A DNA stretch of 64,000 nucleotides, from positions 124,001-188,000 of the IMG/VR virus record IMGVR_UViG_3300009158_000031; one strand, given 5' to 3'. Made by a program: the position numbers and the translations under genes. Shown piece by piece: positions 9,450 through 64,000 of this stretch (positions are counted from its first letter, which is position 1; every line of letters starts with the position of its first letter). The notes beneath the pieces are model-generated. The model was not told the DNA's origin, searched no databases, and saw nothing but the letters and a program-made list of their open reading frames with translations.

Positions 9450-9454
9450 TCAAT

Positions 9455-9910: not shown

Positions 9911-9920
9911 TTTAACTAAT

Positions 9921-10526: not shown

Positions 10527-10527
10527 T

Positions 10528-11010: not shown

Positions 11011-11013
11011 AAT

Positions 11014-11421: not shown

Positions 11422-11648
11422 AACACCTACACACATACAAAGAGTTCTTATTCGAGTCAACGATTTCCGAAATGAAGATAACTTCAGTTGGCGTTAAAGA
11501 GATTCTTAAGAAGCTTTATGACGATGCTAAACTTACAAAAGCATTACATTTTAAAAACTTCCGAGATGCACTCGATTCTATTCTTGGATATAGTCAAACG
11601 GAATTAGAAGAATTAGAAACAGAGATAAAAGAACTAGAGCACGCTTAA
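11418..11648 (+). CDS. Putative internal head protein (CTS 6)
   Basis: MKHLHTYKEFLFESTISE. Confidence 0.6.
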   Translation: MKHLHTYKEFLFESTISEMKITSVGVKEILKKLYDDAKLTKALHFKNFRDALDSILGYSQTELEELETEIKELEHA

Positions 11649-11670
11649 GATAATTTAAAAAATAAAAAAC

Positions 11671-12501: not shown

Positions 12502-12512
12502 AAAAACATAAT

Positions 12513-12989
12513 ATGAAACATATACTCACATTCAAAAACTTCTTAAACGAGGAAAGAGTTTATGGAATGTTCAATGATTCTCAAGGAAAACCATCTAAAC
12601 TTTCACAAGAGATTTTAGATATTTGTCTAAAAGCACTACCTAAATATGTAATAGATAATATTGAATCAGTTGAAGCTTCCGGTTATTCTAAGACAAATTT
12701 AGCATCACCTCCTACGGTTAGTAATAAAGGTCAATCAAGAGGTGAAAATGATTATACGACTATTGTTCTAATATTCAAAAATCCAATGGGAAAATCTAAA
12801 ACAACTGAATTGACGGTTGGATTAAGAAAAAGAACTTCTGGACCAGGAACTGGTTATCTTGCGGTTAAACCTACTGCAAATGGTCATTATGTTTTACCTG
12901 AACATAGTGCCGCAATTGAATTTTATGATGCAGCGCCTGAAAGTTTAGCGGATTTATATAAGAGTACACTAGAAAAATTAATGAAATAA
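12513..12989 (+). CDS. Putative internal head protein (CTS 8)
   Basis: MKHILTFKNFLNEE. Confidence 0.65.
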   Translation: MKHILTFKNFLNEERVYGMFNDSQGKPSKLSQEILDICLKALPKYVIDNIESVEASGYSKTNLASPPTVSNKGQSRGENDYTTIVLIFKNPMGKSKTTELTVGLRKRTSGPGTGYLAVKPTANGHYVLPEHSAAIEFYDAAPESLADLYKSTLEKLMK

Positions 12990-12990
12990 T

Positions 12991-13353
12991 ATGAAACATA
13001 TACCAACATTCGATAATTTCCTAAATGAAGGAACCATCATGATTTTTCACTACTCAAAGAAATCTTCAGAGATTGATGGTGACGTGAAAGAATTACAGAA
13101 GAAAGCTCAAGAATTTATTAAAATCGCAAGAGACAAAGATTACAATATATCTTCTAACGATTCCGTACTTTATTTTCCAAATTTTAAATGGGCAGGAGGT
13201 AAACAAATCTTTGGACCATCATTAGGTATTAAAGCAGGATCAGAAACAATGCTAATTAATCCAATAGGCTCTGATAAAATAATCAAGATTAGCGAAGGCT
13301 TGCTTGTTCGTTTTGTAAAAGACGGCAGAATCGAATCATATAATTTATACTAA
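12991..13353 (+). CDS. Putative internal head protein (CTS 9)
   Basis: MKHIPTFDNFLNEG. Confidence 0.65.
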   Translation: MKHIPTFDNFLNEGTIMIFHYSKKSSEIDGDVKELQKKAQEFIKIARDKDYNISSNDSVLYFPNFKWAGGKQIFGPSLGIKAGSETMLINPIGSDKIIKISEGLLVRFVKDGRIESYNLY

Positions 13354-13354
13354 T

Positions 13355-13603
13355 ATGAAACATATACTCACATTCAAAAACTTCTTAAATGAAGGATTCA
13401 AGAAACCTTATAGCGAAAAAATGAGCCTTGAGGATTTTTCTGCTATAGAAGTTGGAAGTGAGGTTCTTTATGCTGGAGCAACTTACGAAGTGGTTAACAA
13501 CGATGGTGCAACTCTTCAATTAAAACCGGCTAAAGGTGCTAATGGTAAAGCGACTAAAGTTAATTTCTCAATGTTTAATGTTGCTGGAGCAATCCGCGAT
13601 TAG
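13355..13603 (+). CDS. Putative internal head protein (CTS 10)
   Basis: MKHILTFKNFLNEG; SH3-like cargo (IEVGSEVLYAGATYEVV). Confidence 0.65.
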   Translation: MKHILTFKNFLNEGFKKPYSEKMSLEDFSAIEVGSEVLYAGATYEVVNNDGATLQLKPAKGANGKATKVNFSMFNVAGAIRD

Positions 13604-26264: not shown

Positions 26265-29200
26265 TTGAGCGCTAGACAAGTAAATGCACAAGAAGCAATT
26301 GTTTCCATCACTAGCAAGATGGAAGCGATGCTTCAGCAAGTGCAAACCCAATATGATCAGTCAATTAATTTATTAACGTCATTAAATACAACAATGACGG
26401 TTGATGTTGGGCAGGAGCTTAAGAAGCAAACCTCCTTACTTATGTCCATTGAGGCTAAGATAGGAACCAATGGAGGTAGTGCTGGCGAAGATAAAATGTT
26501 AGGCAAGAATTTAGAAATTCTCTCTAAAGGATTGAGTAAACTTGTTAAAGCGGCTGAAAAAATTAAACCTAAAACTGGCGAACAAGTAAAAGAATTTTTA
26601 GGTAATATAGCTGATGGTCTAGCTAGTTTAACTGATAAAATAGATGAAAAGAAAGCTGAAATTATAGCGAATACGGTTATAACTTTAGCAAAAGGTGTTC
26701 TTCTATTTGGATTAGCAATGACTCTATATGTAATACTCGGACCAACCGCAATGTTAGGTTCAATGCTATTTGGATTAACAATTAGACTCTTATTGAAATC
26801 TGCCGGAGAAGTAGATGAAAATTCGCTTAAAGGAATTGTTGCAGTTGCTGCATTAGGTCTTGGTGTTATATATTTTGGATTAGCAATGGCTTTATATGCA
26901 GTTATTGGTATTCCTGCAATGCTAGGTGCTGTTTTATTTGGATTAACCGTTAGATTATTAGCTAAAACTGCCGGATTAAATGATCCTAAAGTTGCTGCTG
27001 GAATTGTCGGAATTGCTGCATTAGGTCTTGGAGCCATATATTTTGGATTAGCAATGTTGGGTTATGCAATTATCGGTATTCCAGCAATGCTAGGTGCTGT
27101 TTTATTTGGATTAACCGTTAGATTATTAGTGAAAACAGCTGGTTTAAACGATCCTAAAGTTGCTGCCGGAATGCAAGCCTTAATAGGACTTGGTAAAGCT
27201 ATTTTAATATTCGGTTTAGTTATGTTGGCTTATGCAATTATTGGTATTCCTGGATTGATTGGTGCTTTGGTTCTTGCATTAACTCTTAAACTTCTTTCGA
27301 AAAGTATTAAGTCAATGGGATCTAATATGGTCAGAAAAGGAATTATAAATATGGCTTTAGGAGCTATTGCTATTATTCTTCTCGGATTAACTATTATATT
27401 ATTTGCAAAAGAGGTTCCTATAATGAGTTCTCTTTATGTTATTCTTACCATTGGTGCATTTGCTTTAGCCTTCTATATAGTAGGTAAATTCTTTAATGAT
27501 ATATTAAAAGGAGCTCTTGCAGTTGCTGCTATAGGATTAGGTATATCATTCTTAGCCTTAGGTTTATTCTTTTATAAATCAGTTGGAATGACTTGGGAAG
27601 AAACCGCAATGTTAGGGGTTACTATCGCTGGTCTTGGATTAGTAATGGGAGGTGCTGGTGAATTCTTTATGGAAATTATTAAAGGATCCGCTGCAATGAT
27701 AGTCGCCGGAATTGCTCTAATAGTTATTTCTGCGGGTTTACTTGTATTCGCTCAAACTAAATTAACATTTCAAGATGCTGCTATTCTAGGAGCTACCATC
27801 TTAGGACTTGGTGTTGTAATGGGAATTGCCGGTGCTGGACCGGTACCTTTATTTATTGCATTAGGATCTGCCGCAATGATTGTTGCTGGTTTATCTTTAG
27901 TAGTTCTTTCTCTTGGTCTTGGAGCATTCAAGCTAACCGGATTTAAAGTTGAAGATGCTTTATCTTTAGGAGCTGCTATAGGTGCAGTTGGTGTAACTAT
28001 GGGTATTGCCGGATTAGCCTCTCCATTTATTATATTAGGTAGTGCAGCAATGGCTATTGCCGGTGTTGCATTAATGCCTCTTGCATTAGGATTGGCCGTA
28101 TTCAAAGCTATTGGTTGGAAAAAAGGAACCGATGATGAGAGTTTAAAATCTGCATTAGGTTCCGTAATATCTGGTTTTCTTGGAGGAGATATGCCTGGTG
28201 GTATTCTTGCATCAATTAAATTTGCTGCTCAAGCGGCAGCTAGATCGGTTCTTCTATTCATAGCAATTCCGCCATTAATTCTTGCCGGTGTTGCTTTATT
28301 GTCTATCTCTTTAGGATTAGCCGCATTTAAGAAAGCCGGATTTACTTCTTCGGATTCTGCTAATATGGAAGCTGCTATTGGTGGTATCGTTGGAGCATTC
28401 TCATTAGTTACTGATAAAGAACGTCAGAAGAAAATGGGAATCAATGTCGATTGGATGGATTTAATGATTGGTATTATGGCACTTTCACAAGCCGGAAATA
28501 CTCTATCTTCATTAGCAAAAGGAATTCAAGCATTTGCTAATCTTTCAGTTATTGAATATGAGGTGGTTGGTGCTGGAACTAAAAATGCTAAAATCGTTCC
28601 TAAAGGAATTACCAAATTAAGCAAGTCCGATTTTGAATCAGCGGCTTATGGAATGGCACAAGTAATTGGGGCTATTGCCGAACCATTCGCTTTAGTTGGT
28701 AAATTAGAAAAGGGTACACCATCTGGAAATCCTTTCTATGATGCAATATTCGGTGGTGGATTTGTATCTGCCGGTATTGATGCATTATCAAGATCTGGAG
28801 ATACTCTTGTTAATTTAGCAAAAGGAGTACAAGCATTCGCTAATCTCGAAATAACTGAATATGAAGTAATTGGTGCTGGAACTAAAAATGCTAAAATAAT
28901 TCCTAAATCGATTACGAAAATGTCGCCGACAGATTTTGCTGCTGCCGGAGCCAATATAGCAAAAATTATTGCGGTTGTTGCCGAAGCATTCGCTAAAGTA
29001 GGTAAAGATGAAGCTGCATCTGAAGGAGTATTCTCTGGAGGATTCTTATCTAAAGGAGTCGAAGCATTAGCTAACATAGGAGAAAATCTACAAGGAATTA
29101 CTGAATCGGTTATTAAAGTTGCAACAGGAACATTTACTCCAATGACTGCCGTTCAAGACGGAAAAGGTACTAAATTAGTACCTGGAACTCCTATTAAAAT

Positions 29201-30005
29201 TTCTAAGGCAATGTTAGAAGAGGCTGCCAGAACAATTAATAGTGTTATAATGGTTCTAGGACAGGGAATGATGGACTTCGGAACATTCGTTGACGAGAAT
29301 GAAGATTCTATCGACGAAGCTATTGAATACATTCCTACAATGAGTGAAGCCTTAATGAAGATGGTAGAGGTTAATGAAAAATTCTCTAAGATAACAGATG
29401 CAGATAAAGGAGTTAAATCATTTACTAGTTTTAATCAAGCAGTAATGGATGCTTATGATCCAGCCAAGCAGAAAAATCTTCCTCAAACAGCAGGATATAT
29501 GATGCTATTCGTTAAAGGTATTGAAAGACTTGCTGCACCGGCCGATCAATTAGGTAAGGTTGCATCTAACGTAGAACGTATAGAAGCAGCAATGAAAAAT
29601 ATCAAAACTCATGTTAATGGATTTGATATGGAAAGGCTTACTAAAACGGATTCTCTATTTAAGTCAATGGCGATTTTATCAAAGAATCCTGAAGCTATGG
29701 CTGCTAAAATTAATGATACTCTTAAAGTTGCATTTGAAGAATTTGGTAAAGCTCTTACCGAAGCAATTAAAGAATCCGGTGGTGGTGGTGGCGGTGGCGG
29801 TGGTGGAATACTTGAAGGCGTTAAAGATATTTTGACTCCAGGTCCAGCAGGTGCTGCTCCAAAAGCTACCGATCCAAAAGGAAAGGCTGCTCCTGGACCT
29901 GCTCCTCTCACTGCAGAGGCGATTGGAGCTGCTATGTCGAAAGCTTTAAATGCCGCTTCAATTACCATAAAACCGGCAGCAAACGCGGTATTCAAAACCA
30001 CCTAA
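26265..30005 (+). CDS. Tape measure protein
   Basis: 1246 aa, Gly/Ala/Leu-rich amphipathic repeats (56-aa period near 26850-27200, about 100-aa period near 28520/28820); follows the chaperone genes; TTG start uncertain. Confidence 0.8.
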   Translation: MSARQVNAQEAIVSITSKMEAMLQQVQTQYDQSINLLTSLNTTMTVDVGQELKKQTSLLMSIEAKIGTNGGSAGEDKMLGKNLEILSKGLSKLVKAAEKIKPKTGEQVKEFLGNIADGLASLTDKIDEKKAEIIANTVITLAKGVLLFGLAMTLYVILGPTAMLGSMLFGLTIRLLLKSAGEVDENSLKGIVAVAALGLGVIYFGLAMALYAVIGIPAMLGAVLFGLTVRLLAKTAGLNDPKVAAGIVGIAALGLGAIYFGLAMLGYAIIGIPAMLGAVLFGLTVRLLVKTAGLNDPKVAAGMQALIGLGKAILIFGLVMLAYAIIGIPGLIGALVLALTLKLLSKSIKSMGSNMVRKGIINMALGAIAIILLGLTIILFAKEVPIMSSLYVILTIGAFALAFYIVGKFFNDILKGALAVAAIGLGISFLALGLFFYKSVGMTWEETAMLGVTIAGLGLVMGGAGEFFMEIIKGSAAMIVAGIALIVISAGLLVFAQTKLTFQDAAILGATILGLGVVMGIAGAGPVPLFIALGSAAMIVAGLSLVVLSLGLGAFKLTGFKVEDALSLGAAIGAVGVTMGIAGLASPFIILGSAAMAIAGVALMPLALGLAVFKAIGWKKGTDDESLKSALGSVISGFLGGDMPGGILASIKFAAQAAARSVLLFIAIPPLILAGVALLSISLGLAAFKKAGFTSSDSANMEAAIGGIVGAFSLVTDKERQKKMGINVDWMDLMIGIMALSQAGNTLSSLAKGIQAFANLSVIEYEVVGAGTKNAKIVPKGITKLSKSDFESAAYGMAQVIGAIAEPFALVGKLEKGTPSGNPFYDAIFGGGFVSAGIDALSRSGDTLVNLAKGVQAFANLEITEYEVIGAGTKNAKIIPKSITKMSPTDFAAAGANIAKIIAVVAEAFAKVGKDEAASEGVFSGGFLSKGVEALANIGENLQGITESVIKVATGTFTPMTAVQDGKGTKLVPGTPIKISKAMLEEAARTINSVIMVLGQGMMDFGTFVDENEDSIDEAIEYIPTMSEALMKMVEVNEKFSKITDADKGVKSFTSFNQAVMDAYDPAKQKNLPQTAGYMMLFVKGIERLAAPADQLGKVASNVERIEAAMKNIKTHVNGFDMERLTKTDSLFKSMAILSKNPEAMAAKINDTLKVAFEEFGKALTEAIKESGGGGGGGGGGILEGVKDILTPGPAGAAPKATDPKGKAAPGPAPLTAEAIGAAMSKALNAASITIKPAANAVFKTT

Positions 30006-42481: not shown

Positions 42482-43126
42482 ATGAAGATAGAAATTCCAA
42501 AAGGCGTAAACGTTTGGTTTACTTCGGATACCCATTACAATCACAAAAACATTTGTCGAGGCGTAAGTACATGGGAAGCTGGAAGAGGAACTCGAGATTT
42601 TACAAATCTACAAAAGATGAACGATGCGATCGTTAATCAAATCAATTCAAAGGTAATGGAAGATGATATTCTTTTCCATCTTGGTGATTGGTCATTTGGT
42701 GGATTTGAATCTATTATGGAATTTCGTAATCGTATCGTTTGTAAAAACATTCACTTAATCTTAGGTAATCATGACCATCATATCGAAAATAATGCAGATG
42801 ATGTTCAAGATTTATTTTCTTCTGTTAATCAGTACTTGAAAATGCAAATCAACATTAACCGAACAGCAAATGGCGTAGATAAACATAACTTCGTTTTATG
42901 TCATTATCCTCTTGGATCTTGGCACGATATGGCAATGGGTGTAATACATTTACATGGTCACGTTCACCTTCCACCAAATTTAAAACTTGGTGAAGGAAAG
43001 GCAATGGATGTAGGTGTTGATGGAAATAATATGGCAGTATACTCATTACAAGAAATTGTGAACATCATGAAGAAACAACCAATTGCCTCTTTACGTTTAC
43101 CAAAAGATCATCATGAACAAGTCTAA
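42482..43126 (+). CDS. Calcineurin-like metallophosphoesterase
   Basis: TSDTHYNH, HLGDWS, LGNHDHH, CHYP, HLHGHVH, DVGVD. Confidence 0.92.
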   Translation: MKIEIPKGVNVWFTSDTHYNHKNICRGVSTWEAGRGTRDFTNLQKMNDAIVNQINSKVMEDDILFHLGDWSFGGFESIMEFRNRIVCKNIHLILGNHDHHIENNADDVQDLFSSVNQYLKMQININRTANGVDKHNFVLCHYPLGSWHDMAMGVIHLHGHVHLPPNLKLGEGKAMDVGVDGNNMAVYSLQEIVNIMKKQPIASLRLPKDHHEQV

Positions 43127-43138
43127 CATAAAATAAAT

Positions 43139-43543
43139 ATGAAAAATCTAATTCTACTTCGAGGATTACCAGGTTCTGGAAAATCCACAGCTGCAAAACT
43201 ATTTCAAGGATCAGGATATTCTTCACATTATGAAGCCGATATGTATTTCCTTAATAAAGAAACTGGTGAATATCAATTTGATCCGAGTAAATTAAAATTG
43301 GCTCATAATTGGTGTGCTATACAAACTCAAAAAGCAATGGTTGATGAGATACCTACTATTATAATCTCGAATACATTTACTCAAGAATGGGAAATGGACA
43401 ATTATCGTGAATTAGCAAAAATGCACGATTATCAAGTATTTACTCTAATTGTAGAAAATCGTCATGGTGGAGTTAATGTACATGGAGTACCTGATGATAA
43501 ATTAAAAGCAATGGAAGACCGTTTTGAACTTAAATTAATATAA
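43139..43543 (+). CDS. P-loop kinase (polynucleotide-kinase/AAA_33-like)
   Basis: LILLRGLPGSGKST, HYEADMYF, IISNTFT, NVHGVP. Confidence 0.88.
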   Translation: MKNLILLRGLPGSGKSTAAKLFQGSGYSSHYEADMYFLNKETGEYQFDPSKLKLAHNWCAIQTQKAMVDEIPTIIISNTFTQEWEMDNYRELAKMHDYQVFTLIVENRHGGVNVHGVPDDKLKAMEDRFELKLI

Positions 43544-43544
43544 C

Positions 43545-43763
43545 ATGAAAAATGACAGACACATTTGGGAAGGTTGGACAGCTCAATCTTTTATCGATGA
43601 ATTACAACCAATCTTTAATATGATAATCCAAAATCAATCTCATATTAAACCTTTTAAAACAAAAGAAGAACTTAAAACCTGGTGTAAGGATCATCAACCT
43701 TACTATAAGAAACATATACCAGAAGTATACAATCATTTCTTAGAACTTACTGAATTAAAATAA
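43545..43763 (+). CDS. Hypothetical protein
   Basis: 72-aa ORF in operon. Confidence 0.6.
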   Translation: MKNDRHIWEGWTAQSFIDELQPIFNMIIQNQSHIKPFKTKEELKTWCKDHQPYYKKHIPEVYNHFLELTELK

Positions 43764-44012
43764 ATGGGAAAAATAATATTAGAATTCGATTCAATCGAAG
43801 AATCGCAAGATGCAAGAGTAGCATTGGATGCGATGAAATGGAAAATGGCAATGTGGGACTTAGATCAAAAGTTAAGAGGAACTACTAAATATGGAGCAAG
43901 TCAACTTGATACAGCAAAAGAAGCAACAGATGAAGAGATGAATATTGCAGAAAAATACAGAAATACGATTAGGGAAATACTTAATGAATATAATCTAAAC
44001 ATAGAAGATTAA
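43764..44012 (+). CDS. Hypothetical protein
   Basis: 82-aa ORF, TAAATG-coupled. Confidence 0.6.
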   Translation: MGKIILEFDSIEESQDARVALDAMKWKMAMWDLDQKLRGTTKYGASQLDTAKEATDEEMNIAEKYRNTIREILNEYNLNIED

Positions 44013-44032
44013 ACGATTACAAAATATAATAG

Positions 44033-44293
44033 ATGAAAAATATTGATATTGAATTAGACCGAATAAATGTTCGTTCAGAACAAATACTTGATAGATTAAA
44101 AGAAATTCAAGGAGAAAGAACAACTATTAAATTCAAGATAAAAAATAATCTAATAGATTTTGTTTTAGGAGAGCTACAAATGCAAACACTCGATTATGAA
44201 GCACTTCTTCTAGTCGAAGAAACGGTAGAATTAGAAGTAGATATTTCGTTCGTGGAGTTAATCGATGAATTGGATATTGATATACAAAGATAA
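44033..44293 (+). CDS. Hypothetical acidic protein
   Basis: 86-aa ORF. Confidence 0.5.
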   Translation: MKNIDIELDRINVRSEQILDRLKEIQGERTTIKFKIKNNLIDFVLGELQMQTLDYEALLLVEETVELEVDISFVELIDELDIDIQR

Positions 44294-44299
44294 AAAATT

Positions 44300-44914
44300 A
44301 TGAAAGCGTTAAAAAAAATAAAGTACTTCATCAAAGATTTCGAATTTTTGAAGGCGTATAACTCACCATTCCTAGCACCAAAACCTCATTTGTACATTGG
44401 AAAAATTGCTTTAGGAACACCACATTTTTTTCCTAGAAAATGGGTAAAGGCTACTCCAGAAAGAGCTACTGAGGCAGCTTTACGAGAAATTGAAGATACC
44501 AAGAAATTTAATGAAAATCATACCGAATATAAAAGAACCGTCAAGACTTTTGATGATCTTTATGTAGAGAAGATGAGATGGTCTTATACCGAACCTAAAA
44601 AAATCGGTTTTGATTTTGTTTCACTTGGTTGGAAAACTAAATGGTCAGATACCGATTATCGTTTTGAATGGTCGCCTAGATGGTCATTTGTCTTTTTTAA
44701 ATGGCAAATTGCCATTACGTTTGTTGCTCCTCAAATAGATCATTATTGGGAATGTTGGTTATTTTATACTCGAAATACTGATAAAACTAAATCAATTGAA
44801 CAAAGAATCATTCAATGTAGAAAAGAATTTCCTTGTAATTGGATTTCCTCAATTGATGGAGTAAAAACAACTACTTGTTATTGGGATGTAATTTTAAAGG
44901 AAAAATGGTTATAA
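44300..44914 (+). CDS. Hypothetical protein
   Basis: 204-aa Trp-rich ORF. Confidence 0.6.
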   Translation: MKALKKIKYFIKDFEFLKAYNSPFLAPKPHLYIGKIALGTPHFFPRKWVKATPERATEAALREIEDTKKFNENHTEYKRTVKTFDDLYVEKMRWSYTEPKKIGFDFVSLGWKTKWSDTDYRFEWSPRWSFVFFKWQIAITFVAPQIDHYWECWLFYTRNTDKTKSIEQRIIQCRKEFPCNWISSIDGVKTTTCYWDVILKEKWL

Positions 44915-44926
44915 CATATAATAGAT

Positions 44927-45493
44927 ATGAAAGTAATATTTTTAGATAATGATGGAGTAATTTGTTTATCTAGCAATTGGGGTGGAAGATCTAAGAAATG
45001 GTCTAATTATAGGAGTGAAAATCCTGAATCTAGTAATGACTTAAGATCTGCTCCTGTTACCGTGAGATTTGATAATTTCGATAAGAAAGCCATTAAAATT
45101 CTTAACGAAGTTATTGAGGAAACTGGTGCTGAAATTGTGGTAAGTTCTGATTGGAAACTTCACGCAAATCTCGAAGAACTTGGAGATTATTATGAATCAC
45201 AAGGAATCGTTAAAAGGCCTATTGCAATAACTCCTAACTTAGAAGATTTTGATCCTGATTCTGCTGGCATATATCATTGGAAAGGGTGGAAGGAAAGAGC
45301 TCGAATATTAGAAATACAAAAGTATCTTGAACTACATCCAGAGATTACACATTGGGTTGCTATTGATGATTTGAATATGTCACCAGAATATAACCAAGAT
45401 CATGGATTAGAACATTTCGTTTTAACGCCGAGATCGAATGAAGGAATTAAACAATCCGGTATAAAAGAAAAACTAATTAATAAATTGAAATAG
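44927..45493 (+). CDS. HAD-superfamily phosphatase (Swiss-Army-Knife RNA-repair-like HAD)
   Basis: KVIFLDNDGV, IVVSSDWK, WVAIDD. Confidence 0.85.
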   Translation: MKVIFLDNDGVICLSSNWGGRSKKWSNYRSENPESSNDLRSAPVTVRFDNFDKKAIKILNEVIEETGAEIVVSSDWKLHANLEELGDYYESQGIVKRPIAITPNLEDFDPDSAGIYHWKGWKERARILEIQKYLELHPEITHWVAIDDLNMSPEYNQDHGLEHFVLTPRSNEGIKQSGIKEKLINKLK

Positions 45494-46156
45494 ATGGAAA
45501 CGAAGATTGTTTGTATCTCTGATACACATGGTAAACACAAACAAATTCCCGAAGATTGGTTTCCTGAAGGAGATATTATCGTACATGCCGGTGATATTAG
45601 TTCAATGGGTTATTTACACGAAATAGAAGAATTTTGTAAATGGTACTCTAATCTATCATATTCTTATAAGATTCTTATTGCAGGAAATCATGATTGGGGA
45701 TTCCAAACTAAACCTCAGGAAGTAAAAGAAATTCTTGATCGTTATCCAGAAATTACCTACCTACAAGATTCTAGTATAGAAATACGAGGTATTAAATTCT
45801 GGGGTTCTCCATGGCAACCTGAATTTTGTGATTGGGCTTTCAATCTTAAAAGAGGACCTCGAATTCTAGAAAGATGGAAACAAATACCCGAAGATACTCG
45901 AGTACTTATTACTCATGGTCCTGTACAGGGAAGATGTGATATGACATTAAGTGGAGAATTCGTTGGTTGTGAAATGCTTGAAATGGAACTTCATACTAGA
46001 TTAAATGTTGAGCTACATATATGCGGACATATTCATTGTGCTCATGGAGAAACTCATGATGGTAAAACACATTTCATCAATGCCGCAATTCTAAACGAAC
46101 GTTATCAAGTACAATATAAACCGATCGTTTACACCGTTGACCTAAACGACGAATAA
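45494..46156 (+). CDS. Metallophosphoesterase (MPPED/239FB-like)
   Basis: CISDTHG, VHAGD, IAGNHD, GSPWQP, ITHGP, HICGHIH. Confidence 0.92.
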   Translation: METKIVCISDTHGKHKQIPEDWFPEGDIIVHAGDISSMGYLHEIEEFCKWYSNLSYSYKILIAGNHDWGFQTKPQEVKEILDRYPEITYLQDSSIEIRGIKFWGSPWQPEFCDWAFNLKRGPRILERWKQIPEDTRVLITHGPVQGRCDMTLSGEFVGCEMLEMELHTRLNVELHICGHIHCAHGETHDGKTHFINAAILNERYQVQYKPIVYTVDLNDE

Positions 46157-58818: not shown

Positions 58819-58864
58819 TTGCGGCTTTTGCCGTTTTAACCATCGAGGATTGAATATATATTAC

Positions 58865-60178
58865 ATGAAAAGATTATTAAAGTATAAAGACTTTGTTGAA
58901 GTTTTAAGCGAAGGTGCTAGACTTCAAGCATTGGTCGATGATCTTCCTTTGTTTGAAGGTGGTGCATACGGTCACCTATCACATCCTTTCGAAGACATGA
59001 ATTTGACTATGGCAGATTTGCATACGATGATACAAGATACTGTTAATGGATCTTTTGGTCCTGAGAATTTTGTTCAAGAGAAAACTGATGGTCAGCAAAT
59101 ATCAATATCTTGGAAGGATGGTAAATTGATTGCGGCAAGAAATAAAAGTCATCTAAAGAATGCTGGCGAAGCCGCATTAGATTCTTCTGGTATTGCTTCT
59201 ATGTTTGCTGGTCGTGGTGATATCGAAATTGCCTATAATGCAGCAATGGAAGATCTTCAAAAATCTATTGGCGGTTTATCAGATAAAGATAAATTAGCCT
59301 TCTTTGCTAATGGTAAGAAATTCGTTTCATTAGAAGTTATTACGCCTATCACACAAAATACAGTTCCTTATGGTCAAAATATGCTTGTATTCCATGGAGT
59401 ACTTGAATATGATGAATCCGGAAATGTTATCGATGAAGATAAACAAGCTGCTAGAAATCTTGGTAAATCAATTGCTGATGCGAATCTAGCTGCACAGAAA
59501 ATGTTCTTTGTTAGAGGACCTCAAGATATGGATATTAAACCATTTCCTAATACCGCAAAAAGATCTTCATATTACGAAAAGAAATACAACGAAATCCTTA
59601 CTACTTGTGGATTAACTGATGCATCTACCGTATTTGATTATGCAATAGGTATGGCTAGATTAGTACTTGAAGAAGAAGCTAAATCTGCAAAGGTTGAAAT
59701 CCCTGCATCTGCAATCGATGGTTTGGCTGCACGTATAGCAGATATTAATAAGTCTTTTTCGGTTTCGTTAATCAAGAAAGAACTTGGTGATAATGCTGAT
59801 TGGTATTTTGATCTAGAAAAGAAAAGTGCCAAACAACTTAAACGTAAAATTTATGCTCCTCTTGAATCGCTTTTCCTTGAAATAGGAACAGAATTCATGA
59901 AGAATATGTCTACCTTCCTATCTGCAAATCCTACGGAAGCAGCCGAAGCAATGAAAAATGAAATTGATTCTACTATCGCAAAGATTCGTACAAATGGTGA
60001 CGAAAAAGACGTAGAAAAATTAGAACACGAATTAACTAGAGTTACTGCTGCTGGTGGTGTCGAAGGATTGGTTCCTACTGAAGGAATTACATTCGTTTAT
60101 AAAGGTAAACTTTATAAGTATACTGGAATTTTCGCTCCACTACATCAAATACGCTCTATTTTAGCTTATAAAAAATAA
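58865..60178 (+). CDS. CTS-bearing ligase-like (covalent nucleotidyltransferase) protein
   Basis: True start ATG 58865: MKRLLKYKDFVEVLSE..LFEGG; GHLSHPFED; QEKTDG (KxDG motif I); PTEGITF..YKYTG (motif IV/V-like). Confidence 0.62.
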   Translation: MKRLLKYKDFVEVLSEGARLQALVDDLPLFEGGAYGHLSHPFEDMNLTMADLHTMIQDTVNGSFGPENFVQEKTDGQQISISWKDGKLIAARNKSHLKNAGEAALDSSGIASMFAGRGDIEIAYNAAMEDLQKSIGGLSDKDKLAFFANGKKFVSLEVITPITQNTVPYGQNMLVFHGVLEYDESGNVIDEDKQAARNLGKSIADANLAAQKMFFVRGPQDMDIKPFPNTAKRSSYYEKKYNEILTTCGLTDASTVFDYAIGMARLVLEEEAKSAKVEIPASAIDGLAARIADINKSFSVSLIKKELGDNADWYFDLEKKSAKQLKRKIYAPLESLFLEIGTEFMKNMSTFLSANPTEAAEAMKNEIDSTIAKIRTNGDEKDVEKLEHELTRVTAAGGVEGLVPTEGITFVYKGKLYKYTGIFAPLHQIRSILAYKK

Positions 60179-60191
60179 AAACAAAGTAATT

Positions 60192-60368
60192 ATGCAAAAG
60201 TACGAAGAAATCAAAACTTTAATCTCATCAATCGATGGTGACGTAGACAAATTTTATAATAAAGGAAATAAGTCTGCTGGAACTCGTATCCGTAAAGCTA
60301 TGCAAGATTTGAAAAAACTTGCTCAAGACTTACGTGTTGATGTTCAAGAATCGAAAAGTGCTGAGTAA
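60192..60368 (+). CDS. Histone H1-like protein, Hc1 family (58 aa, not in track)
   Basis: MQKYEEIKTLISSIDGDVDKFYNKGNKSAGTRIRKAMQDLKKLAQDLR; KF..KGNK.AGTR.RK is the Hc1/Bacteroidota histone-H1-like signature. Confidence 0.85.
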   Translation: MQKYEEIKTLISSIDGDVDKFYNKGNKSAGTRIRKAMQDLKKLAQDLRVDVQESKSAE

Positions 60369-60374
60369 TCCTAA

Positions 60375-60830
60375 ATGACCGGATTGTTCAAAATTAATGA
60401 AGATTCTGCCTTTGGACCGGGAATGATGTTTGGCATCCCTGGTCCTGGTCCAAAAGCGGATTCTCCAAAACAACCTTCTGATAAAAAGAAGGAAAAAGGA
60501 ATTACCCCGAAACAAATGAAGAAGACTATACCATCATTCAAAAAATTTAACGAAGGTTTTGCTTACGTTAAAGATCCTTTCAGAGAAGGTGAAAGGATGT
60601 TCAGTAAAGATATTAAAATAGACAATGTTGCTGTTATTAATATCAATGGTTCTATTGATGGATTAGATGCTACACACACAGCAATCGTATCCGTTATAAC
60701 TAGTACTATGGATAACTTCGGCGAAGATCTTGGTAAAGAACGAATCATATTAACACAAAAAGATTTTACCACTAAAGCAGAGGCTGAAAGCTTTTTGAAG
60801 AAAATTGAAAAAGAAATTATCTACAAATAA
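60375..60830 (+). CDS. Hypothetical protein with N-terminal FKINE and internal CTS-like IPSFKKFNE
   Basis: Sequence motifs as stated. Confidence 0.55.
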   Translation: MTGLFKINEDSAFGPGMMFGIPGPGPKADSPKQPSDKKKEKGITPKQMKKTIPSFKKFNEGFAYVKDPFREGERMFSKDIKIDNVAVININGSIDGLDATHTAIVSVITSTMDNFGEDLGKERIILTQKDFTTKAEAESFLKKIEKEIIYK

Positions 60831-61417
60831 TGAAGAAATTTAAAGAATTCGTTACAGATATTCTGATATTTGAAAAGATTGATGGAAAGGAAGTTTGTAT
60901 ATTTCCTGGACGTTTTCAACCTTTTCATAATGGACATATTGAAGCAATACATCGAACAGCAAAAGCTTTCGGAGTTCCTGTTATCCCGGTACAAATCAAA
61001 TCAAAGAACGAAAATTCACCTTTCCCAGATTCTCTTCTAGAAAAGATTGGTAAGGCCATGATTAAAGAATTTCCTTTCATTGAAGATTATGTACTTTATC
61101 CTCCTGATAAGAAAACTGTAGTACCTCAAATGGTTAAATTCCTTCAAGAAAAGGGTTATGATCCAATTGGTATTGGTTGTGGAAGTGATCGTTTAAGAGA
61201 TTATGAACGTCAAGTTGAATATCTAACATCACCGAAATCGGATGTTCAAGTTAATAAATTTTCGGTTGCAATGGTTGATGAACGAAGAGCCGATGGTCCT
61301 TCAGGAACAAGAGTTCGTGAAGCACTTATGAATGATGATAAAGAGGCATTCGAAAAAGCTACACCAAGATCACTACATCCTTTCTATAAAGAGCTACAAA
61401 AATACCTTAAAAAATAA
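60830..61417 (+). CDS. CTS-bearing HIGH-superfamily (cytidylyl/adenylyl) nucleotidyltransferase
   Basis: MKKFKEFVTDILIFE; FPGRFQPFHNGH (HxGH); GSDR; SGTRVRE. Confidence 0.85.
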   Translation: MKKFKEFVTDILIFEKIDGKEVCIFPGRFQPFHNGHIEAIHRTAKAFGVPVIPVQIKSKNENSPFPDSLLEKIGKAMIKEFPFIEDYVLYPPDKKTVVPQMVKFLQEKGYDPIGIGCGSDRLRDYERQVEYLTSPKSDVQVNKFSVAMVDERRADGPSGTRVREALMNDDKEAFEKATPRSLHPFYKELQKYLKK

Positions 61418-61433
61418 AAATCATAATATAAAT

Positions 61434-62957
61434 ATGAAACCTATTAAAAACTACAACGAATTCATTAATGAAGCATGGATTGGTCCATTCGTATTCAATG
61501 AAGACATGACCGATGATGAACTAAAGGCTATATACCAAGGTGCATTAGATGGATTTGCTTATTGGCAAAAAGGATTTGAATATCCAAAAGCCGATTACAA
61601 AAAGGCATATACTGAAATTGGAAAGATTCTAAAGAAAAGAGGAGTTAATGTTGATGAATCTGTTAATGAAGGATCTAACGACGAAATGGTAAAACGGAGT
61701 TGTGTCGAAAGACTTTCTCAATTCTTTAGAGTTAGTCCAAACGCATTATCACATTTCAAATTTGATGGAACCGATAACATTAAAGCTTTAACAAAAGCTC
61801 TTAATTCTACATCAGATGAAGGAACCGAGGCATACTATAAAGTAGCAATCCGAGTTGGAAAACAAGATGCCGGTATCGAAGAATCTATCGAGGAATCAGC
61901 TAAATGTCCTCCTATATACATTCCGGTATTATCTAATATCGATCATACTAGAATAATCAAATGGATGGATATTCATTTTGATAGTCATAAATGGGATATG
62001 AAGAAATCCGGTGCTGGTTTTGAAATCGATGTTGAAAAACTATCTAGTCAAGAACAAGATGATTTATTAAAATATTTACACTCACAAGATTATTTAGAAG
62101 AATCTGTTAATGAAGCTTGGAGTAATATAGACACCGACAAAGCTGCCGATCTAATCAATAAAGAAATTGGAGTTAATCCTGGTTATTTCTTTATTGGCGA
62201 TGAAGATTTATGCATCAAATTTGATAAATTATGGACTGAAAAGAAATACAAAGTAGCTCTTAATATGTTATTTTTTATTGAAAATCTAAAAGATCTTAAA
62301 GACTTCATAAAACAAAACCAAAACGAATCGGTTAATGAAGCAGTATCACCAGAAGTACATCGTATGGTTAATAAATTTGTAACCGGTATGGCTGATAAAT
62401 ATGATTATTCTTTACAAGATGCAGTTTATGCAATACTAGACGTTTTAAAAAGTCAAAAATATAAAGGATTAAAAGAATCTGTTAATGAAGGTGAAACTTT
62501 AATATTTGATGAGATCGGAGAAAACCTAACCAAACTTCAGGATCAAATAGATGCAATGCTTAAATGGGAAATCACCGATCAAAAATGGATCGTTGCACTT
62601 AAAACAATTCAATCTGCCTGTTCTAAATTGGAAGATACTGTCGCTAAAGCTGATCAGAAATTAGGTGCTATTGAATATAATGAATCCATTAGTGAAGGTC
62701 TTTTAAAATTAGATGAAGGTGCTGTTAAACAATTTGAGATCGATTATAAAGACATGGAAAGTAGTATCAAACGAGGTATTGGTTGGATTGATCCTGAATA
62801 TGTGGCTGAAACTTGGGAGAATTCTTCAGATACTATTGATTATGAAATAGTTAGAAATGAAATTCTTACTCGTCTAATTAAAGCCGATCTTCTTTATACA
62901 TCACTAGATGGAGAAACTAAAGGTAAAAGAATTACCAACATAAGTCAAATTAAATAA
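61434..62957 (+). CDS. CTS-bearing multi-module polyprotein with ES(V/I)(N/E/S)E linkers
   Basis: True start ATG 61434: MKPIKNYNEFINE; linkers DESVNE, EESIEE, EESVNE, NESVNE, KESVNE, NESISE. Confidence 0.75.
   Translation: MKPIKNYNEFINEAWIGPFVFNEDMTDDELKAIYQGALDGFAYWQKGFEYPKADYKKAYTEIGKILKKRGVNVDESVNEGSNDEMVKRSCVERLSQFFRVSPNALSHFKFDGTDNIKALTKALNSTSDEGTEAYYKVAIRVGKQDAGIEESIEESAKCPPIYIPVLSNIDHTRIIKWMDIHFDSHKWDMKKSGAGFEIDVEKLSSQEQDDLLKYLHSQDYLEESVNEAWSNIDTDKAADLINKEIGVNPGYFFIGDEDLCIKFDKLWTEKKYKVALNMLFFIENLKDLKDFIKQNQNESVNEAVSPEVHRMVNKFVTGMADKYDYSLQDAVYAILDVLKSQKYKGLKESVNEGETLIFDEIGENLTKLQDQIDAMLKWEITDQKWIVALKTIQSACSKLEDTVAKADQKLGAIEYNESISEGLLKLDEGAVKQFEIDYKDMESSIKRGIGWIDPEYVAETWENSSDTIDYEIVRNEILTRLIKADLLYTSLDGETKGKRITNISQIK
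61656..62490 (+). repeat. 16-bp linker repeats gaatc(t/g)gttaatgaag at 61656, 62100, 62325 and 62475
   Basis: Three identical copies and one with a single substitution; degenerate copies at 61881 and 62682. Confidence 0.92.
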
Positions 62958-63859
62958 TGCTAAAATTTAATCAATTTGTTAACCTGATTCTTAATGAAGG
63001 AGGTAATGCGATTGAGGATGCTCGTCCTATTTTGCAATCTGAAATAGATGCAACGTATGCATATGTTATTAAAAACATATATCCTCTTATTGGTCTTGCC
63101 GAAGATTTTGCTAAACCAATAGGATCTTTTAAGAAAAAAGCACCTGATCAAACATCTGGTGATATCGATATTGCCGTTCTTGCTGATAGAATTGCCGGAG
63201 AAAATGGAATTGATTTATCTCAGGTTCTTGAATTCATCGCATCTAAATTGAGTGATTATTCTCCGGTCGTTAGTAAAGGGTTTCAACAAGTTTCTATAGG
63301 TGTTCCAATTGAAGGTGATAAGAAAAAAGGTATTGCACAAATTGATTTGATGCTAACAGATAATCTGAATTTTTCCTCCTTCATGTATCATTCACCAGAC
63401 TTTACTCAAGCAGAATCCAAATATAAAGGACTTTACCGTAATATTCTACTAATGAATATCATTAGCAATTCGAAACGAGAAACTACCAAGCTAACCGACA
63501 AAGGTGAAATTGAAGAATATCGTTCATATGTACTTCGTCTAAATCAAGGTGTTGTTGCGGTAACCAAATCGTTTATAGGTAAGAAAGGGTTAGTTAAGAA
63601 TCCTACATTACTCAACGATCAAGATAAATTTATGTCTAATACTCCAGAAGTTATTGCGGAATTGGCATTCGGTCCGGATGTTCCCATTTCAGAAATAATG
63701 ACTTTTGAAGATACTTGGAGACATACAATGGATTCTAAATTTATTCACCAAGATAAATTAGATGCAATTCTAAAAGATTTCAGAACTAGATTACTTGCTG
63801 CTAAAGTTCCTTTCCCTATTGAATGTGTAGAACAATACCCAAATATATTTACATCATGA
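62957..63859 (+). CDS. CTS-bearing DNA polymerase beta-superfamily nucleotidyltransferase
   Basis: MLKFNQFVNLILNEGGNA; PIGSFKKK..SGDIDIAV (GS..DxD); AQIDLM. Confidence 0.8.
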   Translation: MLKFNQFVNLILNEGGNAIEDARPILQSEIDATYAYVIKNIYPLIGLAEDFAKPIGSFKKKAPDQTSGDIDIAVLADRIAGENGIDLSQVLEFIASKLSDYSPVVSKGFQQVSIGVPIEGDKKKGIAQIDLMLTDNLNFSSFMYHSPDFTQAESKYKGLYRNILLMNIISNSKRETTKLTDKGEIEEYRSYVLRLNQGVVAVTKSFIGKKGLVKNPTLLNDQDKFMSNTPEVIAELAFGPDVPISEIMTFEDTWRHTMDSKFIHQDKLDAILKDFRTRLLAAKVPFPIECVEQYPNIFTS

Positions 63860-64000
63860 TGTTAAAATACAATCAATTCGTTCAATGGTTAAATGAATCA
63901 GCTATGGCTCCAGTTGAATGGAATGAGAAGCCTAAATATCGAGTACAATTTCTTAGTTTCTTAGAAGATAAAAATAAAGAACTTATAATTGATGGTAAAT
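63856..64000 (+). CDS. CTS-bearing protein, 3'-truncated by the window edge
   Basis: MMLKYNQFVQWLNESAM.. starts at an ATGA overlap with the previous stop. Confidence 0.65.
   Translation, partial: MMLKYNQFVQWLNESAMAPVEWNEKPKYRVQFLSFLEDKNKELIIDGK

What the first reader, a model, noticed from the sequence alone, without database searches (positions are those of the whole stretch)
58865..64000. Three different nucleotidyltransferase folds, each with a capsid-targeting leader, in one operon
Seen: a ligase-like protein (QEKTDG; EGITF..K), a HIGH-family transferase (RFQPFHNGH) and a Pol-beta-family transferase (GS..SGDIDI), plus the polyprotein and a truncated fifth CTS gene. All carry K(F/Y)xxF..xE leaders. 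Established: these folds perform RNA/DNA ligation, NMN/CTP transfer, and template-free tailing or second-messenger synthesis, respectively. Inference: the virion injects a ready-made nucleotide-handling kit that acts before phage transcription. Possible uses are tRNA end repair, NAD+ rescue against NADase defences, DNA circularisation or protection, and modification of host proteins.
Basis: partly seen in the sequence, partly recalled or inferred. Interest (0 to 1): 0.75.

Follow-up and report, generated by a model that had tools for sequence, protein, structure and literature searches.

The report
Capsid-targeted RNA-repair-like enzyme cassette in phage
An uncultivated 254-kb T4-like marine phage puts a T4-style "pack me into the head" leader on about 30 proteins, among them a conserved trio of nucleotide-transferring enzymes (an RNA-ligase-like protein, a HIGH-motif transferase and a mini polymerase-X-like protein) that in related phages are fused to classic RNA-repair domains, so the phage probably injects a ready-made nucleic-acid repair kit with its DNA.

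Summary
Window 58865-64000 is a + strand operon of seven genes. P1 is ligase-like, P4 a HIGH transferase and P6 a Pol-beta-superfamily transferase. All quoted motifs are present.

The leaders are real. About 30 ORFs in the genome carry them, against 0-2 in shuffles. They match the T4 capsid targeting sequence MKTYQEFIAE in register. The genome encodes a T4-type S77 prohead protease. The same x-N-E|[AGS] site punctuates the P5 polyprotein and the scaffold.

Structure models refine the folds. P1 is closest to RNA ligases. P6 is closest to family X DNA polymerases (palm plus thumb, like ASFV Pol X), not to cyclic-nucleotide synthases.

P1, P4 and P6 form a conserved cassette in most of 43 related viral contigs. 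In other phages they are fused with polynucleotide-kinase-like, HD and CCA-adding domains. This points to RNA or tRNA end repair.

Distant homologues in cultured phages lack the leader, so capsid routing is a clade-specific addition.

Packaging, cleavage and all enzyme activities remain untested. The P4 substrate is unknown.

Verdict: a new variant of known kinds, and moderately to highly interesting.

The parts
58853..58861 (+). Late-promoter-like motif GAATATATA, 4 nt upstream of the P1 start codon
   Evidence: The motif [AG]ATATA[TA]A[AT] occurs 61 times on the + strand and 16 times on the - strand. It also precedes the sheath gene, the protease-scaffold gene and many leader genes. Its function is inferred.
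58865..60178 (+). P1, 437 aa: an RNA-ligase-like covalent nucleotidyltransferase with a ~180-aa helical insert between motifs IIIa and IV. Leader is aa 1-16; a second site, LFE|GG, follows aa 31.
   Evidence: Invariant K73, D75, G76, R92, E157, H177, E406, G407 and K418 in 36 diverse homologues. AF2 pLDDT 89, with the leader and linker below 50. The top 14 structural hits are all ligases, RNA ligases first (Z 8.2-9.7). No Pfam, NCBIfam or PHROG hit.
60192..60368 (+). Hc1, a 58-aa histone H1-like DNA-binding protein without a leader
   Evidence: Pfam Hc1 1.3e-24. Present only in the closest relatives.
60375..60830 (+). P3, 151 aa, unknown function. A canonical leader, MKKTIPSFKKFNE|G, starts at internal Met48 (nt 60516).
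   Evidence: Sequence. The homologue in L027 matches only aa 49-150. No family hit.
60830..61417 (+). P4, 195 aa: HIGH-motif (Rossmann-like) nucleotidyltransferase. Leader-like aa 1-15; the Rossmann strand beta-1 starts at aa 21.
   Evidence: Pfam CTP_transf_like 1.4e-8. PHROG cytidyltransferase 4e-11. PDB PPAT and archaeal NMNAT hits from aa 21 on. NMNAT models score far below cut-off.
61425..61433 (+). Second late-promoter-like motif (TAATATAAA region) just upstream of P5
61434..62957 (+). P5, 507 aa: a heteropolyprotein made of a 13-aa leader plus seven unrelated acidic segments of 50-86 aa. Segments 1-6 each end in ES[VI][NES]E followed by A, G or S.
   Evidence: The six-residue site occurs 6 times in the whole genome, all in P5. 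The segments do not match each other. P5 is hypervariable between near-identical phages.
62957..63859 (+). P6, 300 aa: Pol-beta-superfamily nucleotidyltransferase with a family-X-like palm and thumb. Leader is aa 1-14.
   Evidence: Invariant G56, S57, D69, D71 and D130 in 35 homologues. AF2 pLDDT 90. Foldseek finds Pol beta at E 6e-6. VIA-align top 8 hits are all family X polymerases: ASFV Pol X Z 9.2 with 161 of 176 residues aligned. AFDB searches agree.
63857..64000 (+). P7, cut by the window end (507-508 aa in the genome, ending at genome position 189382). Leader MLKYNQFVQWLNE|S; function unknown.
   Evidence: No Pfam, NCBIfam or PDB hit. The ESM Atlas gives only weak leads to restriction-endonuclease clusters.

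Best explanation
The region is a late operon of head-internal 'cargo' proteins in an uncultivated 254-kb T4-like phage.

Proposed route:
1. Each cargo protein starts with a 13-16-residue propeptide of the T4 capsid-targeting type: aromatic-x-x-Phe-[Val/Ile/Leu]-x-Glu.
2. The propeptide docks the protein onto the scaffolding core of the prohead (inferred).
3. The phage's S77 (gp21-type) prohead protease cuts after the Glu (inferred).
4. The mature protein stays in the head and is ejected with the DNA (inferred).

P5 is a polyprotein that the same protease would cut into seven small internal proteins.

Three of the cargoes form a conserved cassette:
- P1: an RNA-ligase-like enzyme, with Lys73 as the predicted AMP-accepting residue.
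- P4: a HIGH-motif nucleotidyltransferase.
- P6: a minimal polymerase-X-like nucleotidyltransferase, with a catalytic triad at Asp69, Asp71 and Asp130.

In related phages these same domains are fused with polynucleotide-kinase-like, HD-phosphohydrolase and CCA-adding domains. The cassette is therefore most likely a nucleic-acid end-repair module that works mainly on RNA or tRNA. P6 would restore missing 3' nucleotides and P1 would seal the break. P4 would make or transfer an adenylyl or cytidylyl group onto an unknown phosphate acceptor.

Delivery in the virion would put these enzymes in the cell at the moment of infection.

Shown: fold classes, conserved catalytic residues, synteny, fusions, the leader statistics and the protease gene.
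Inferred: packaging, cleavage, substrates and timing.
For: Leader and protease:
- 36 regex hits against 0-2 in shuffles, on about 30 ORFs.
- T4's CTS is MKTYQEFIAE (PMC8442874). Targeting depends on residues 4 and 7, and processing on residues 8 and 10 (PMC9026906). P5's YNEFINE against T4's YQEFIAE has the same spacing.
- The leader codons vary synonymously, so selection acts at the protein level.
- An S77 protease and a gp23-type capsid protein are encoded.
- [VILFYM]NE[AGS] occurs 67 times against 14-17 for control motifs. The top carriers are P5 and the protease-scaffold protein.
- The capsid protein starts MYLINE|S.
- Leaderless distant homologues begin exactly at the predicted cut: Atu_ph07 gp065 starts M-GGRAF against P6's LNE|GGNAIE.
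- The leaders have low pLDDT.
- The late-promoter-like motif is shared with the sheath and protease genes.

Folds.

Cassette:
- Of 43 loci with a P6 homologue, 30 also hold P1 and 32 hold P4, on the same strand and often directly adjacent.
- Leaders are kept on most P1, P4 and P6 homologues.

RNA-repair context:
- L057 encodes a 1636-aa protein with HIGH + CCA/PolyA_pol + DUF5661 + AAA_33 kinase + HD + a P6-like domain.
- P0382 has HIGH + DUF5661 + AAA_33 + HD + PolyA_pol + a P1-like domain.
- P1-HIGH fusions occur in both orders, and one homologue has an intein next to motif I.
- A HAD_SAK_2 RNA-repair domain is a neighbour in 7 loci.
- Pairing of an RNA ligase with a Pol-beta nucleotidyltransferase is a known RNA-repair theme (RlaP; PMC7824862).
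- The phage has only 2 tRNA genes.
Against: - There are no virion proteomics for this phage or for any relative carrying the leader.
- The first 50 kb of the nearest cultured relative examined, PTm1, shows no such leaders.
- P6's best structural matches are DNA polymerases, and a DNA-binding Hc1 sits in the operon, so a DNA substrate is not excluded.
- This genome's end-healing enzymes (AAA_33 kinase, HAD_SAK_2, two metallophosphoesterases) and its canonical RNA ligase (DRB0094 family) have no leader. The injected trio alone could not repair the 2',3'-cyclic-phosphate/5'-OH ends that anticodon nucleases make.
- P4's leader lacks the usual small residue after the Glu.
- The structural Z-scores (about 9) and TM-scores (about 0.35) are moderate. 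No sequence profile links P1 or P6 to solved ligases or polymerases.
- P4's substrate is unknown.
- The complex prediction gave no answer.
Confidence: 0.45

Rival explanations
1. Same packaging route, but the cassette works on the phage's own DNA. The Pol-X-like P6 would fill gaps and P1 would seal nicks, possibly nicks with an RNA 3' end. Repair or end-joining of the injected genome would then be immediate, with Hc1 as a DNA-condensing partner.
For: - P6's eight best structural matches are all family X DNA polymerases, over palm plus thumb.
- ASFV pairs a minimal Pol X with a ligase (knowledge of that system; the ASFV ligase is also among the P1 hits, Z 7.0).
- Hc1 is in the operon.
- P4-like domains are fused to linker histone in other viral proteins.
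- P1's best hit, Naegleria Rnl, seals nicks in duplexes (PMC4408790, listed).
Against: - P1 ranks RNA ligases above DNA ligases and has no OB domain.
- The fusion partners are CCA-adding, polynucleotide-kinase-like and HD domains, an RNA-repair set.
- Hc1 is absent from most syntenic loci.
Confidence: 0.2
2. The leader is not a capsid address. It would be a shared N-terminal tag for some other purpose, such as a processing or activation signal, assembly into a cytoplasmic complex, or turnover. The three enzymes would then act in the cytoplasm late in infection, like ordinary phage RNA-repair genes.
For: - Homologues in cultured phages (Atu_ph07 gp065, P-HM1, Moby) are leaderless. gp065 is not annotated as a virion protein, although neighbouring genes are.
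- About 30 tagged ORFs include typical cytoplasmic enzymes, such as a RimK-like ATP-grasp.
- There is no proteomic evidence.
Against: - The leader matches the experimentally defined T4 CTS in register.
- The same site is enriched in the protease-scaffold protein and at the capsid protein's N-terminus.
- Leader genes cluster between the portal and protease genes, where T4 keeps its core proteins.
- T4's prohead protease is active only inside proheads (established knowledge of gp21).
Confidence: 0.2
3. The kit serves nucleotide-cofactor or signalling chemistry: NAD+ resynthesis by an NMNAT-like P4 against NADase defences, and/or cyclic-oligonucleotide synthesis or tailing by P6.
For: - P4 shares GRFQPFHxGH and SGTxxR with archaeal-type NMNAT.
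- CD-NTases appear among the weaker P6 hits.
Against: - The NMNAT models score 15.7-30 bits against cut-offs of 127-409, and match only the HIGH-motif segment at the start of the Rossmann domain (about aa 21-54).
- No Nampt or Nudix partner was looked for or seen nearby.
- CD-NTases align only to the ~100-residue core at Z 5.3-6.2, below the Pol X hits.
- This reading does not explain the conserved linkage to an RNA-ligase-like protein or the kinase/HD/CCA fusions.
Confidence: 0.07

Closest known systems
T4 internal proteins (IPI-III) and Alt: capsid targeting sequence plus gp21 prohead protease
   Same: - A short N-terminal propeptide with the same aromatic-x-x-Phe-[I/L/V]-x-Glu spacing.
- Cleavage after the Glu.
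- An S77 protease gene.
- Diverse, fast-evolving cargo.
- An enzyme (Alt) among the T4 cargoes.
   Different: - About 30 tagged ORFs, against a handful in T4.
- The cargo includes three nucleotidyltransferases, a RimK-like ATP-grasp and a seven-part polyprotein.
- The P5 segments are acidic; T4's IPs are described as basic (PMC8442874).
- The preferred site is x-N-E|[AGS].
- Packaging here is inferred, not shown.
Phage and bacterial RNA repair systems: T4 Pnkp + Rnl1, RNA ligase + RlaP Pol-beta NTase, 'Swiss-army-knife' multidomain repair proteins
   Same: - A ligase paired with a Pol-beta-superfamily nucleotidyltransferase.
- In relatives, fusion to P-loop kinase, HD/HAD phosphoesterase and CCA-adding domains.
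   Different: - P1 and P6 belong to no curated family. There is no hit to RlaP (PF10127) or to the RNA_ligase models.
- A HIGH-motif transferase is a constant third member.
- The trio carries capsid-targeting leaders, whereas this genome's healing enzymes do not.
ASFV Pol X, the minimal family X DNA polymerase
   Same: - Palm plus thumb only, with no 8-kDa or fingers domain.
- A three-Asp catalytic centre.
- It is the best structural match (Z 9.2, 161 of 176 residues aligned).
   Different: - 13% identity and no sequence-profile link.
- P6 has an extra beta-rich insert and a C-terminal helical extension.
- The template and substrate of P6 are unknown.
Giant-phage ejection proteins processed by a prohead protease (phiKZ, SPN3US)
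   Same: Many head-internal proteins are matured by a T4-related protease and are presumed to be injected.
   Different: - A different phage lineage.
- The leader here is a compact, T4-like, easily recognisable consensus.
- RNA-repair-type enzymes were not found reported as packaged cargo in the papers read here. This is my reading, not an exhaustive search.

Membership tests
T4-type CTS-bearing head-internal proteins | N-terminal 10-19-aa propeptide with aromatic targeting positions and an [I/L/V]-x-E cleavage site | tested here: met
   Leaders of P1, P5, P6 and P7 (and of P3 from Met48) fit. P4 fits only weakly. The comparison is with MKTYQEFIAE and its mapped residues 4, 7, 8 and 10.
T4-type CTS-bearing head-internal proteins | The genome encodes a gp21-type (Peptidase_S77) prohead protease | tested here: met
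   PF03420 scores 50.7 bits, above cut-off, at genome 101739-102092, fused to a scaffold-like region.
T4-type CTS-bearing head-internal proteins | The protein is found in proheads or virions and is cleaved at the site | not testable with these tools
   The genome is a metagenomic contig and no virion proteome exists. The indirect support is motif enrichment in the scaffold and leaderless homologues that start at the predicted cut.
ATP-dependent polynucleotide ligase / covalent nucleotidyltransferase superfamily (P1) | Motif I KxDG with the nucleotide-accepting lysine, plus motifs III, IIIa, IV (EG) and V (K) | tested here: met
   K73, D75, G76, R92, E157, H177, E406, G407 and K418 are invariant in 36 sequences of 34-74% identity. 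One homologue has an intein next to motif I.
ATP-dependent polynucleotide ligase / covalent nucleotidyltransferase superfamily (P1) | Adenylyltransferase-domain fold | tested here: met
   The top 14 VIA hits are all ligases, at Z 6.7-9.7 with 180-215 residues aligned. Foldseek finds RNA ligases at probability 0.8-0.94.
Curated RNA/DNA ligase sequence families (Pfam, NCBIfam) | Score above the family cut-off | tested here: not met
   No hit in Pfam, NCBIfam or PHROGs, or by profile against PDB sequences. By contrast, this genome's other ligase hits TIGR02306 at 1e-59.
HIGH-motif (cytidylyltransferase-like) nucleotidyltransferases (P4) | Pfam PF01467 above cut-off, an HxGH motif and a second ISxxxxR-type motif | tested here: met
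   35.5 bits against a cut-off of 21. Motifs H-N-G-H and SGTRVRE are present.
NMN adenylyltransferase (P4) | Equivalog model above cut-off | tested here: not met
   15.7-30 bits against cut-offs of 127-409, and only over the HIGH-motif segment at about aa 21-54.
Family X DNA polymerases (P6) | Pol-beta palm with G[SG] and a DxD...D triad, followed by a thumb subdomain | tested here: met
   G56, S57, D69, D71 and D130 are invariant. The top 8 VIA hits are all family X, with 161-178 residues aligned over palm plus thumb.
Family X DNA polymerases (P6) | Sequence-family membership and the 8-kDa/fingers domains | tested here: not met
   No Pfam hit. The N-terminal domains are absent, as in ASFV Pol X. 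TM-score is only about 0.35.
RlaP (PF10127) RNA-ligase-associated Pol-beta NTases (P6) | PF10127 match | tested here: not met
   No hit for P6 at E <= 1, and none anywhere in the genome. Only the genomic association with a ligase is shared.
CD-NTase / cyclic-oligonucleotide synthases (P6) | CD-NTase fold over the whole domain, with a CBASS-type context | tested here: not met
   Z 5.3-6.2 over about 100 core residues only. No effector or CBASS neighbours are present.

The most novel reading that the evidence does not exclude
A large clade of uncultivated marine T4-like phages has re-routed a whole set of translation-apparatus repair and modification enzymes through the capsid. It did so by adding a T4-type targeting propeptide, or by stringing the enzymes into protease-cut polyproteins. 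The set includes an RNA-ligase-like protein, a HIGH transferase, a Pol-X-like transferase and a RimK-like ATP-grasp. In relatives it also includes kinase, HD and CCA-adding domains.

The virion would then inject a pre-assembled RNA/tRNA repair kit that neutralises tRNA- or RNA-cleaving defences before any phage gene is expressed. The HIGH transferase, which is the N-terminal module of several of the fused proteins examined, would have a new nucleic-acid-end-directed activity.
Probability: 0.3. Interest if true: 0.85.

Novelty: new variant of a known kind. Interest (0 to 1): 0.66.

Why it matters
- It would extend the T4 paradigm of injected internal proteins from small inhibitors and one ADP-ribosyltransferase to a multi-enzyme nucleic-acid repair kit.
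- It would show that capsid routing can be gained by simply adding a ~13-residue tag, or by concatenating enzymes into polyproteins.
- It gives a fold and a likely chemistry to two large, unannotated viral protein families. P1 has more than 1600 clusters at 50% identity and P6 has more than 200 homologues.
- The compact leader and cleavage consensus could be used to predict head-internal proteomes of uncultivated phages from sequence alone. It also gives testable substrates for a new prohead protease specificity.

Tried and rejected
- DNA search of the region against 50,697 phage records: no match.
- Single-sequence and profile searches of P1, P6 and P7 against PDB sequences: only chance hits.
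- PHROGs and NCBIfam: nothing for P1, P3, P5, P6 or P7.
- Cyanophage P-HM1 neighbours of the P4 homologue, one of them annotated 'possible cytitidyltransferase', were tested as hidden P1 or P6 homologues. hhalign probability was 0.1%, so this was rejected.
- KptA/Tpt1 (PF01885), RlaP (PF10127) and DUF6267 (PF19782): absent from the genome. A Trl1-type pathway fed with NAD+ is therefore not supported.
- Three-chain complex prediction for P1 + P6 + P4: score 0.00, which the tool states is no evidence either way.
- First 50 kb of Tenacibaculum phage PTm1 searched for the leader: none found, and its annotation carries no proteomic flags.
- ESM Atlas search for P7: only weak restriction-endonuclease leads.
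- No tRNA genes in the window.
- The idea that the leader is a conserved RNA element was rejected, because the conserved residues use synonymous codons.

Full report
**What is there**

The window is bases 124001-188000 of a single 254,393-bp viral contig (IMG/VR). It has 33% G+C and CheckV estimates it as 83% complete. Almost all genes are on the + strand. The contig encodes a large terminase, a tail sheath and topoisomerase II, a T4-type prohead protease (Peptidase_S77) and a gp23-type capsid protein.

By terminase, the nearest relatives share only 34-44% identity. They are uncultured huge phages, Sphingomonas phage PAU and Tenacibaculum phages PTm1/PTm5. The region has no nucleotide match among 50,697 phage records.

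The finding's coordinates hold seven + strand genes:
- P1, 58865-60178
- an Hc1 histone-like gene, 60192-60368 (Pfam 1.3e-24)
- P3, 60375-60830
- P4, 60830-61417
- P5, 61434-62957
- P6, 62957-63859
- P7, from 63857, cut by the window end

**The leaders**

P1, P5, P6 and P7 begin with M..K[F/Y]x[D/E/Q]F[V/I]...E followed by G, A or S. P4 is a weaker version (IFE|K). P3 has a canonical leader if it starts at its internal Met48.

This signal is not specific to the operon:
- A leader regex finds 36 Met-anchored matches in the genome, all on the + strand. Twenty shuffles give 0-2 and the reversed sequence gives 1.
- About 30 ORFs carry it, in clusters. One cluster of seven small genes lies at window 9186-13600. 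Another lies between the portal and protease genes.
- The consensus MK.I.TF.EF[VIL]NE|[AGS] has the same spacing as the T4 capsid targeting sequence MKTYQEFIAE (PMC8442874). In T4, residues 4 and 7 direct targeting, and residues 8 and 10 direct cleavage by gp21 (PMC9026906). P5's YNEFINE against T4's YQEFIAE is the clearest case.
- The conserved residues use synonymous codons, so selection acts on the peptide and not on an RNA element.

**The cleavage site**

- The site [VILFYM]NE[AGS] occurs 67 times in + strand ORFs, against 14-17 for control motifs. The two richest proteins are P5 (6 sites) and the protease-scaffold fusion (5 sites).
- The capsid protein starts MYLINE|S.
- P5 is a 13-residue leader followed by seven mutually unrelated, acidic segments of 50-86 residues. 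The first six end in ES[VI][NES]E before A, G or S. That hexamer occurs six times in the genome, all in P5.
- A relative has a different polyprotein with the same ESVNE|A junctions.
- A motif, [AG]ATATA[TA]A[AT], occurs 61 times on the + strand and 16 times on the - strand. It precedes the sheath gene, the protease-scaffold gene, many leader genes, P1 and P5. I read it as a late promoter; this is an inference.

**The three enzymes**

P4 is a bona fide HIGH-motif nucleotidyltransferase:
- Pfam CTP_transf_like scores 35.5 bits against a cut-off of 21. PHROG gives cytidyltransferase.
- Its Rossmann core starts at residue 21, so the first ~20 residues are an extension.
- Its GRFQPFHNGH and SGTRVRE motifs look most like archaeal-type NMNAT. 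The NMNAT models score far below cut-off, so its substrate is open.

P1 has no family hit anywhere, yet it is a very large family:
- 488 homologues at 90% clustering, and 1604 representative clusters at 50%.
- In 36 sequences of 34-74% identity, K73, D75, G76 (EKTDG), R92, E157, H177, E406, G407 and K418 are invariant. This is the motif I/Ia/III/IIIa/IV/V pattern of covalent nucleotidyltransferases.
- The AlphaFold model has pLDDT 89, with the leader and linker below 50.
- Its 14 best matches are all ligases. RNA ligases come first: Naegleria Rnl Z 9.7, Trl1 9.2, TbREL1 9.1, T4 Rnl2 and Rnl1 8.7. DNA ligases score 6-8. The viral structure library agrees.
- A helical insert of about 180 residues separates motifs IIIa and IV.
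- One homologue carries an intein next to motif I.

P6 also has no family hit:
- It has more than 200 homologues, with invariant G56, S57, D69, D71 and D130.
- Its model has pLDDT 90.
- Foldseek matches DNA polymerase beta at E 6e-6.
- In an unbiased search, the eight best hits are all family X polymerases, aligned over palm and thumb. ASFV Pol X gives Z 9.2 with 161 of 176 residues aligned.
- TUTases, MenT and CD-NTases match only the ~100-residue core at lower Z.
- P6 is therefore polymerase-X-like. It is not a member of any curated family, and it is not RlaP.

**Comparative evidence**

Synteny:
- Forty-three viral contigs encode a P6 homologue. Thirty also hold P1 and 32 hold P4 within 8 kb. 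These lie on the same strand, usually in the order P1-P4-P6, and are often directly adjacent.
- This holds down to about 35-40% identity.
- Hc1, P3, P5 and P7 are variable passengers.

Leaders in the same loci:
- P6: 19 of 27 distinct N-termini have a leader. Six more are internal junctions that keep the same FEQFVSE|GG-type site.
- P1: about 16 of 18.
- P4: about 22 of 26.

Distant homologues in cultured phages lack the leader:
- Atu_ph07 gp065 starts M-GGRAF, exactly where P6 is predicted to be cut. It is not annotated as a virion protein.
- The cyanophage P-HM1 and Stenotrophomonas Moby P4 homologues start at the Rossmann strand.

The leader is therefore a separable, clade-specific addition.

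**Function**

Fusions are the main clue:
- Microcystis phage Mel-JY01 fuses a P4-like and a P1-like domain through IIAE|GG.
- P1-HIGH fusions occur in both orders.
- Five of six long P1 homologues examined carry a HIGH domain. P0382 (1930 aa) reads HIGH - DUF5661 - AAA_33 kinase - HD - PolyA_pol/CCA - P1.
- L057 encodes a 1636-aa protein that reads HIGH - CCA-adding head - DUF5661 - AAA_33 kinase - HD - P6, with a KLNE|GG junction.
- A HAD_SAK_2 'Swiss Army Knife RNA repair' domain is a neighbour in seven loci.

Kinase, phosphoesterase, CCA-adding enzyme and ligase form the classical RNA end-healing and sealing set. Pairing of a ligase with a Pol-beta transferase is a described RNA-repair theme (PMC7824862). 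The phage has only two tRNA genes.

I therefore favour RNA/tRNA end repair. There are two caveats:
- P6 looks like a DNA polymerase, and a DNA-binding Hc1 sits in the operon.
- This genome's own healing enzymes have no leader: kinase at window 43139-43543, HAD_SAK_2 at 44927-45493, and two metallophosphoesterases. Nor does its canonical DRB0094-type RNA ligase. The injected trio could not by itself mend cyclic-phosphate/5'-OH breaks.

**What remains open**

- Packaging, cleavage, timing and every enzymatic activity are inferences.
- The complex prediction was uninformative.
- P4-like domains are also fused in other viral proteins to RimK, DUF5824, kinase, Pol-beta transferase and linker-histone domains. 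RimK-like and DUF5824 proteins also carry a leader in this genome. P4 may therefore be a common head module of cargo polyproteins, with a role I cannot define.

**Verdict**

- The capsid-targeting reading is well supported by sequence logic but is unproven.
- Among the proposed uses, RNA repair is the best supported. Second-messenger synthesis and NAD rescue are not supported.
- This is a new variant of known kinds: T4 CTS cargo combined with phage RNA-repair cassettes.

Noticed in passing
window 9186-13600: A run of seven small ORFs (76-201 aa) lies just downstream of the tail-tube-like gene. All start with near-identical leaders (MKNYINTFE[EG]FLNE|S, MKHIPTFDNFLNE|G and similar). This looks like the counterpart of T4's polymorphic internal-protein cluster. 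None has a Pfam hit.
   Followed up: partly
window 42482-46156: A leaderless RNA end-healing cluster: a metallophosphoesterase-like ORF (42482-43126), an AAA_33 P-loop kinase (43139-43543), a HAD_SAK_2 'Swiss Army Knife RNA repair' phosphatase (44927-45493) and a second metallophosphoesterase-like ORF (45494-46156).
   Followed up: partly
L003 16526-17533 (genome 198526-199533): A canonical RNA ligase of the DRB0094 family (TIGR02306, 1e-59) with no leader. The phage therefore has two ligase-type genes, one leader-bearing and predicted to be packaged, the other leaderless.
   Followed up: partly
L016 (genome 109124-110623): A 500-aa leader-bearing protein (MNLKYFSDFVNE|A) with a RimK-like ATP-grasp domain (2e-34) and a weak Zn_protease-like C-terminus. 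RimK-type enzymes add glutamates to ribosomal protein S6, so this hints at injected modification of the translation apparatus.
   Followed up: no
window 60192-60368: A 58-aa Hc1 histone H1-like protein sits inside the cargo operon without a leader. In other viral proteins, P4-like domains are fused to linker-histone domains.
   Followed up: no
genome-wide; e.g. window 4882, 58853, 61425: The motif [AG]ATATA[TA]A[AT] lies 4-30 nt upstream of many structural and leader genes (61 on the + strand, 16 on the - strand). The upstream regions are A-rich with no Shine-Dalgarno sequence. This would fit a Bacteroidota-type host.
   Followed up: partly
P0241 (homologue of P1): A P1 homologue carries an intein (Intein_splicing, 5e-12) inserted just before the KxDG motif region.
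   Followed up: no
L020 (genome 218420-218815): A leader-bearing 132-aa ORF has a sub-threshold match to the NleE cysteine methyltransferase effector family (22.9 bits against a cut-off of 27).
   Followed up: no
L004 9682-11583 (genome 101682-103583): The prohead protease is fused to a long, repeat-rich, scaffold-like C-terminal region in one 633-aa ORF, with five x-N-E|[AGS] sites. In T4 the protease (gp21) and scaffold (gp22) are separate genes.
   Followed up: partly
window 26265-30005: A 1246-aa ORF with no PHROG hit lies in a stretch of raised G+C (0.36-0.39 against about 0.32).
   Followed up: no
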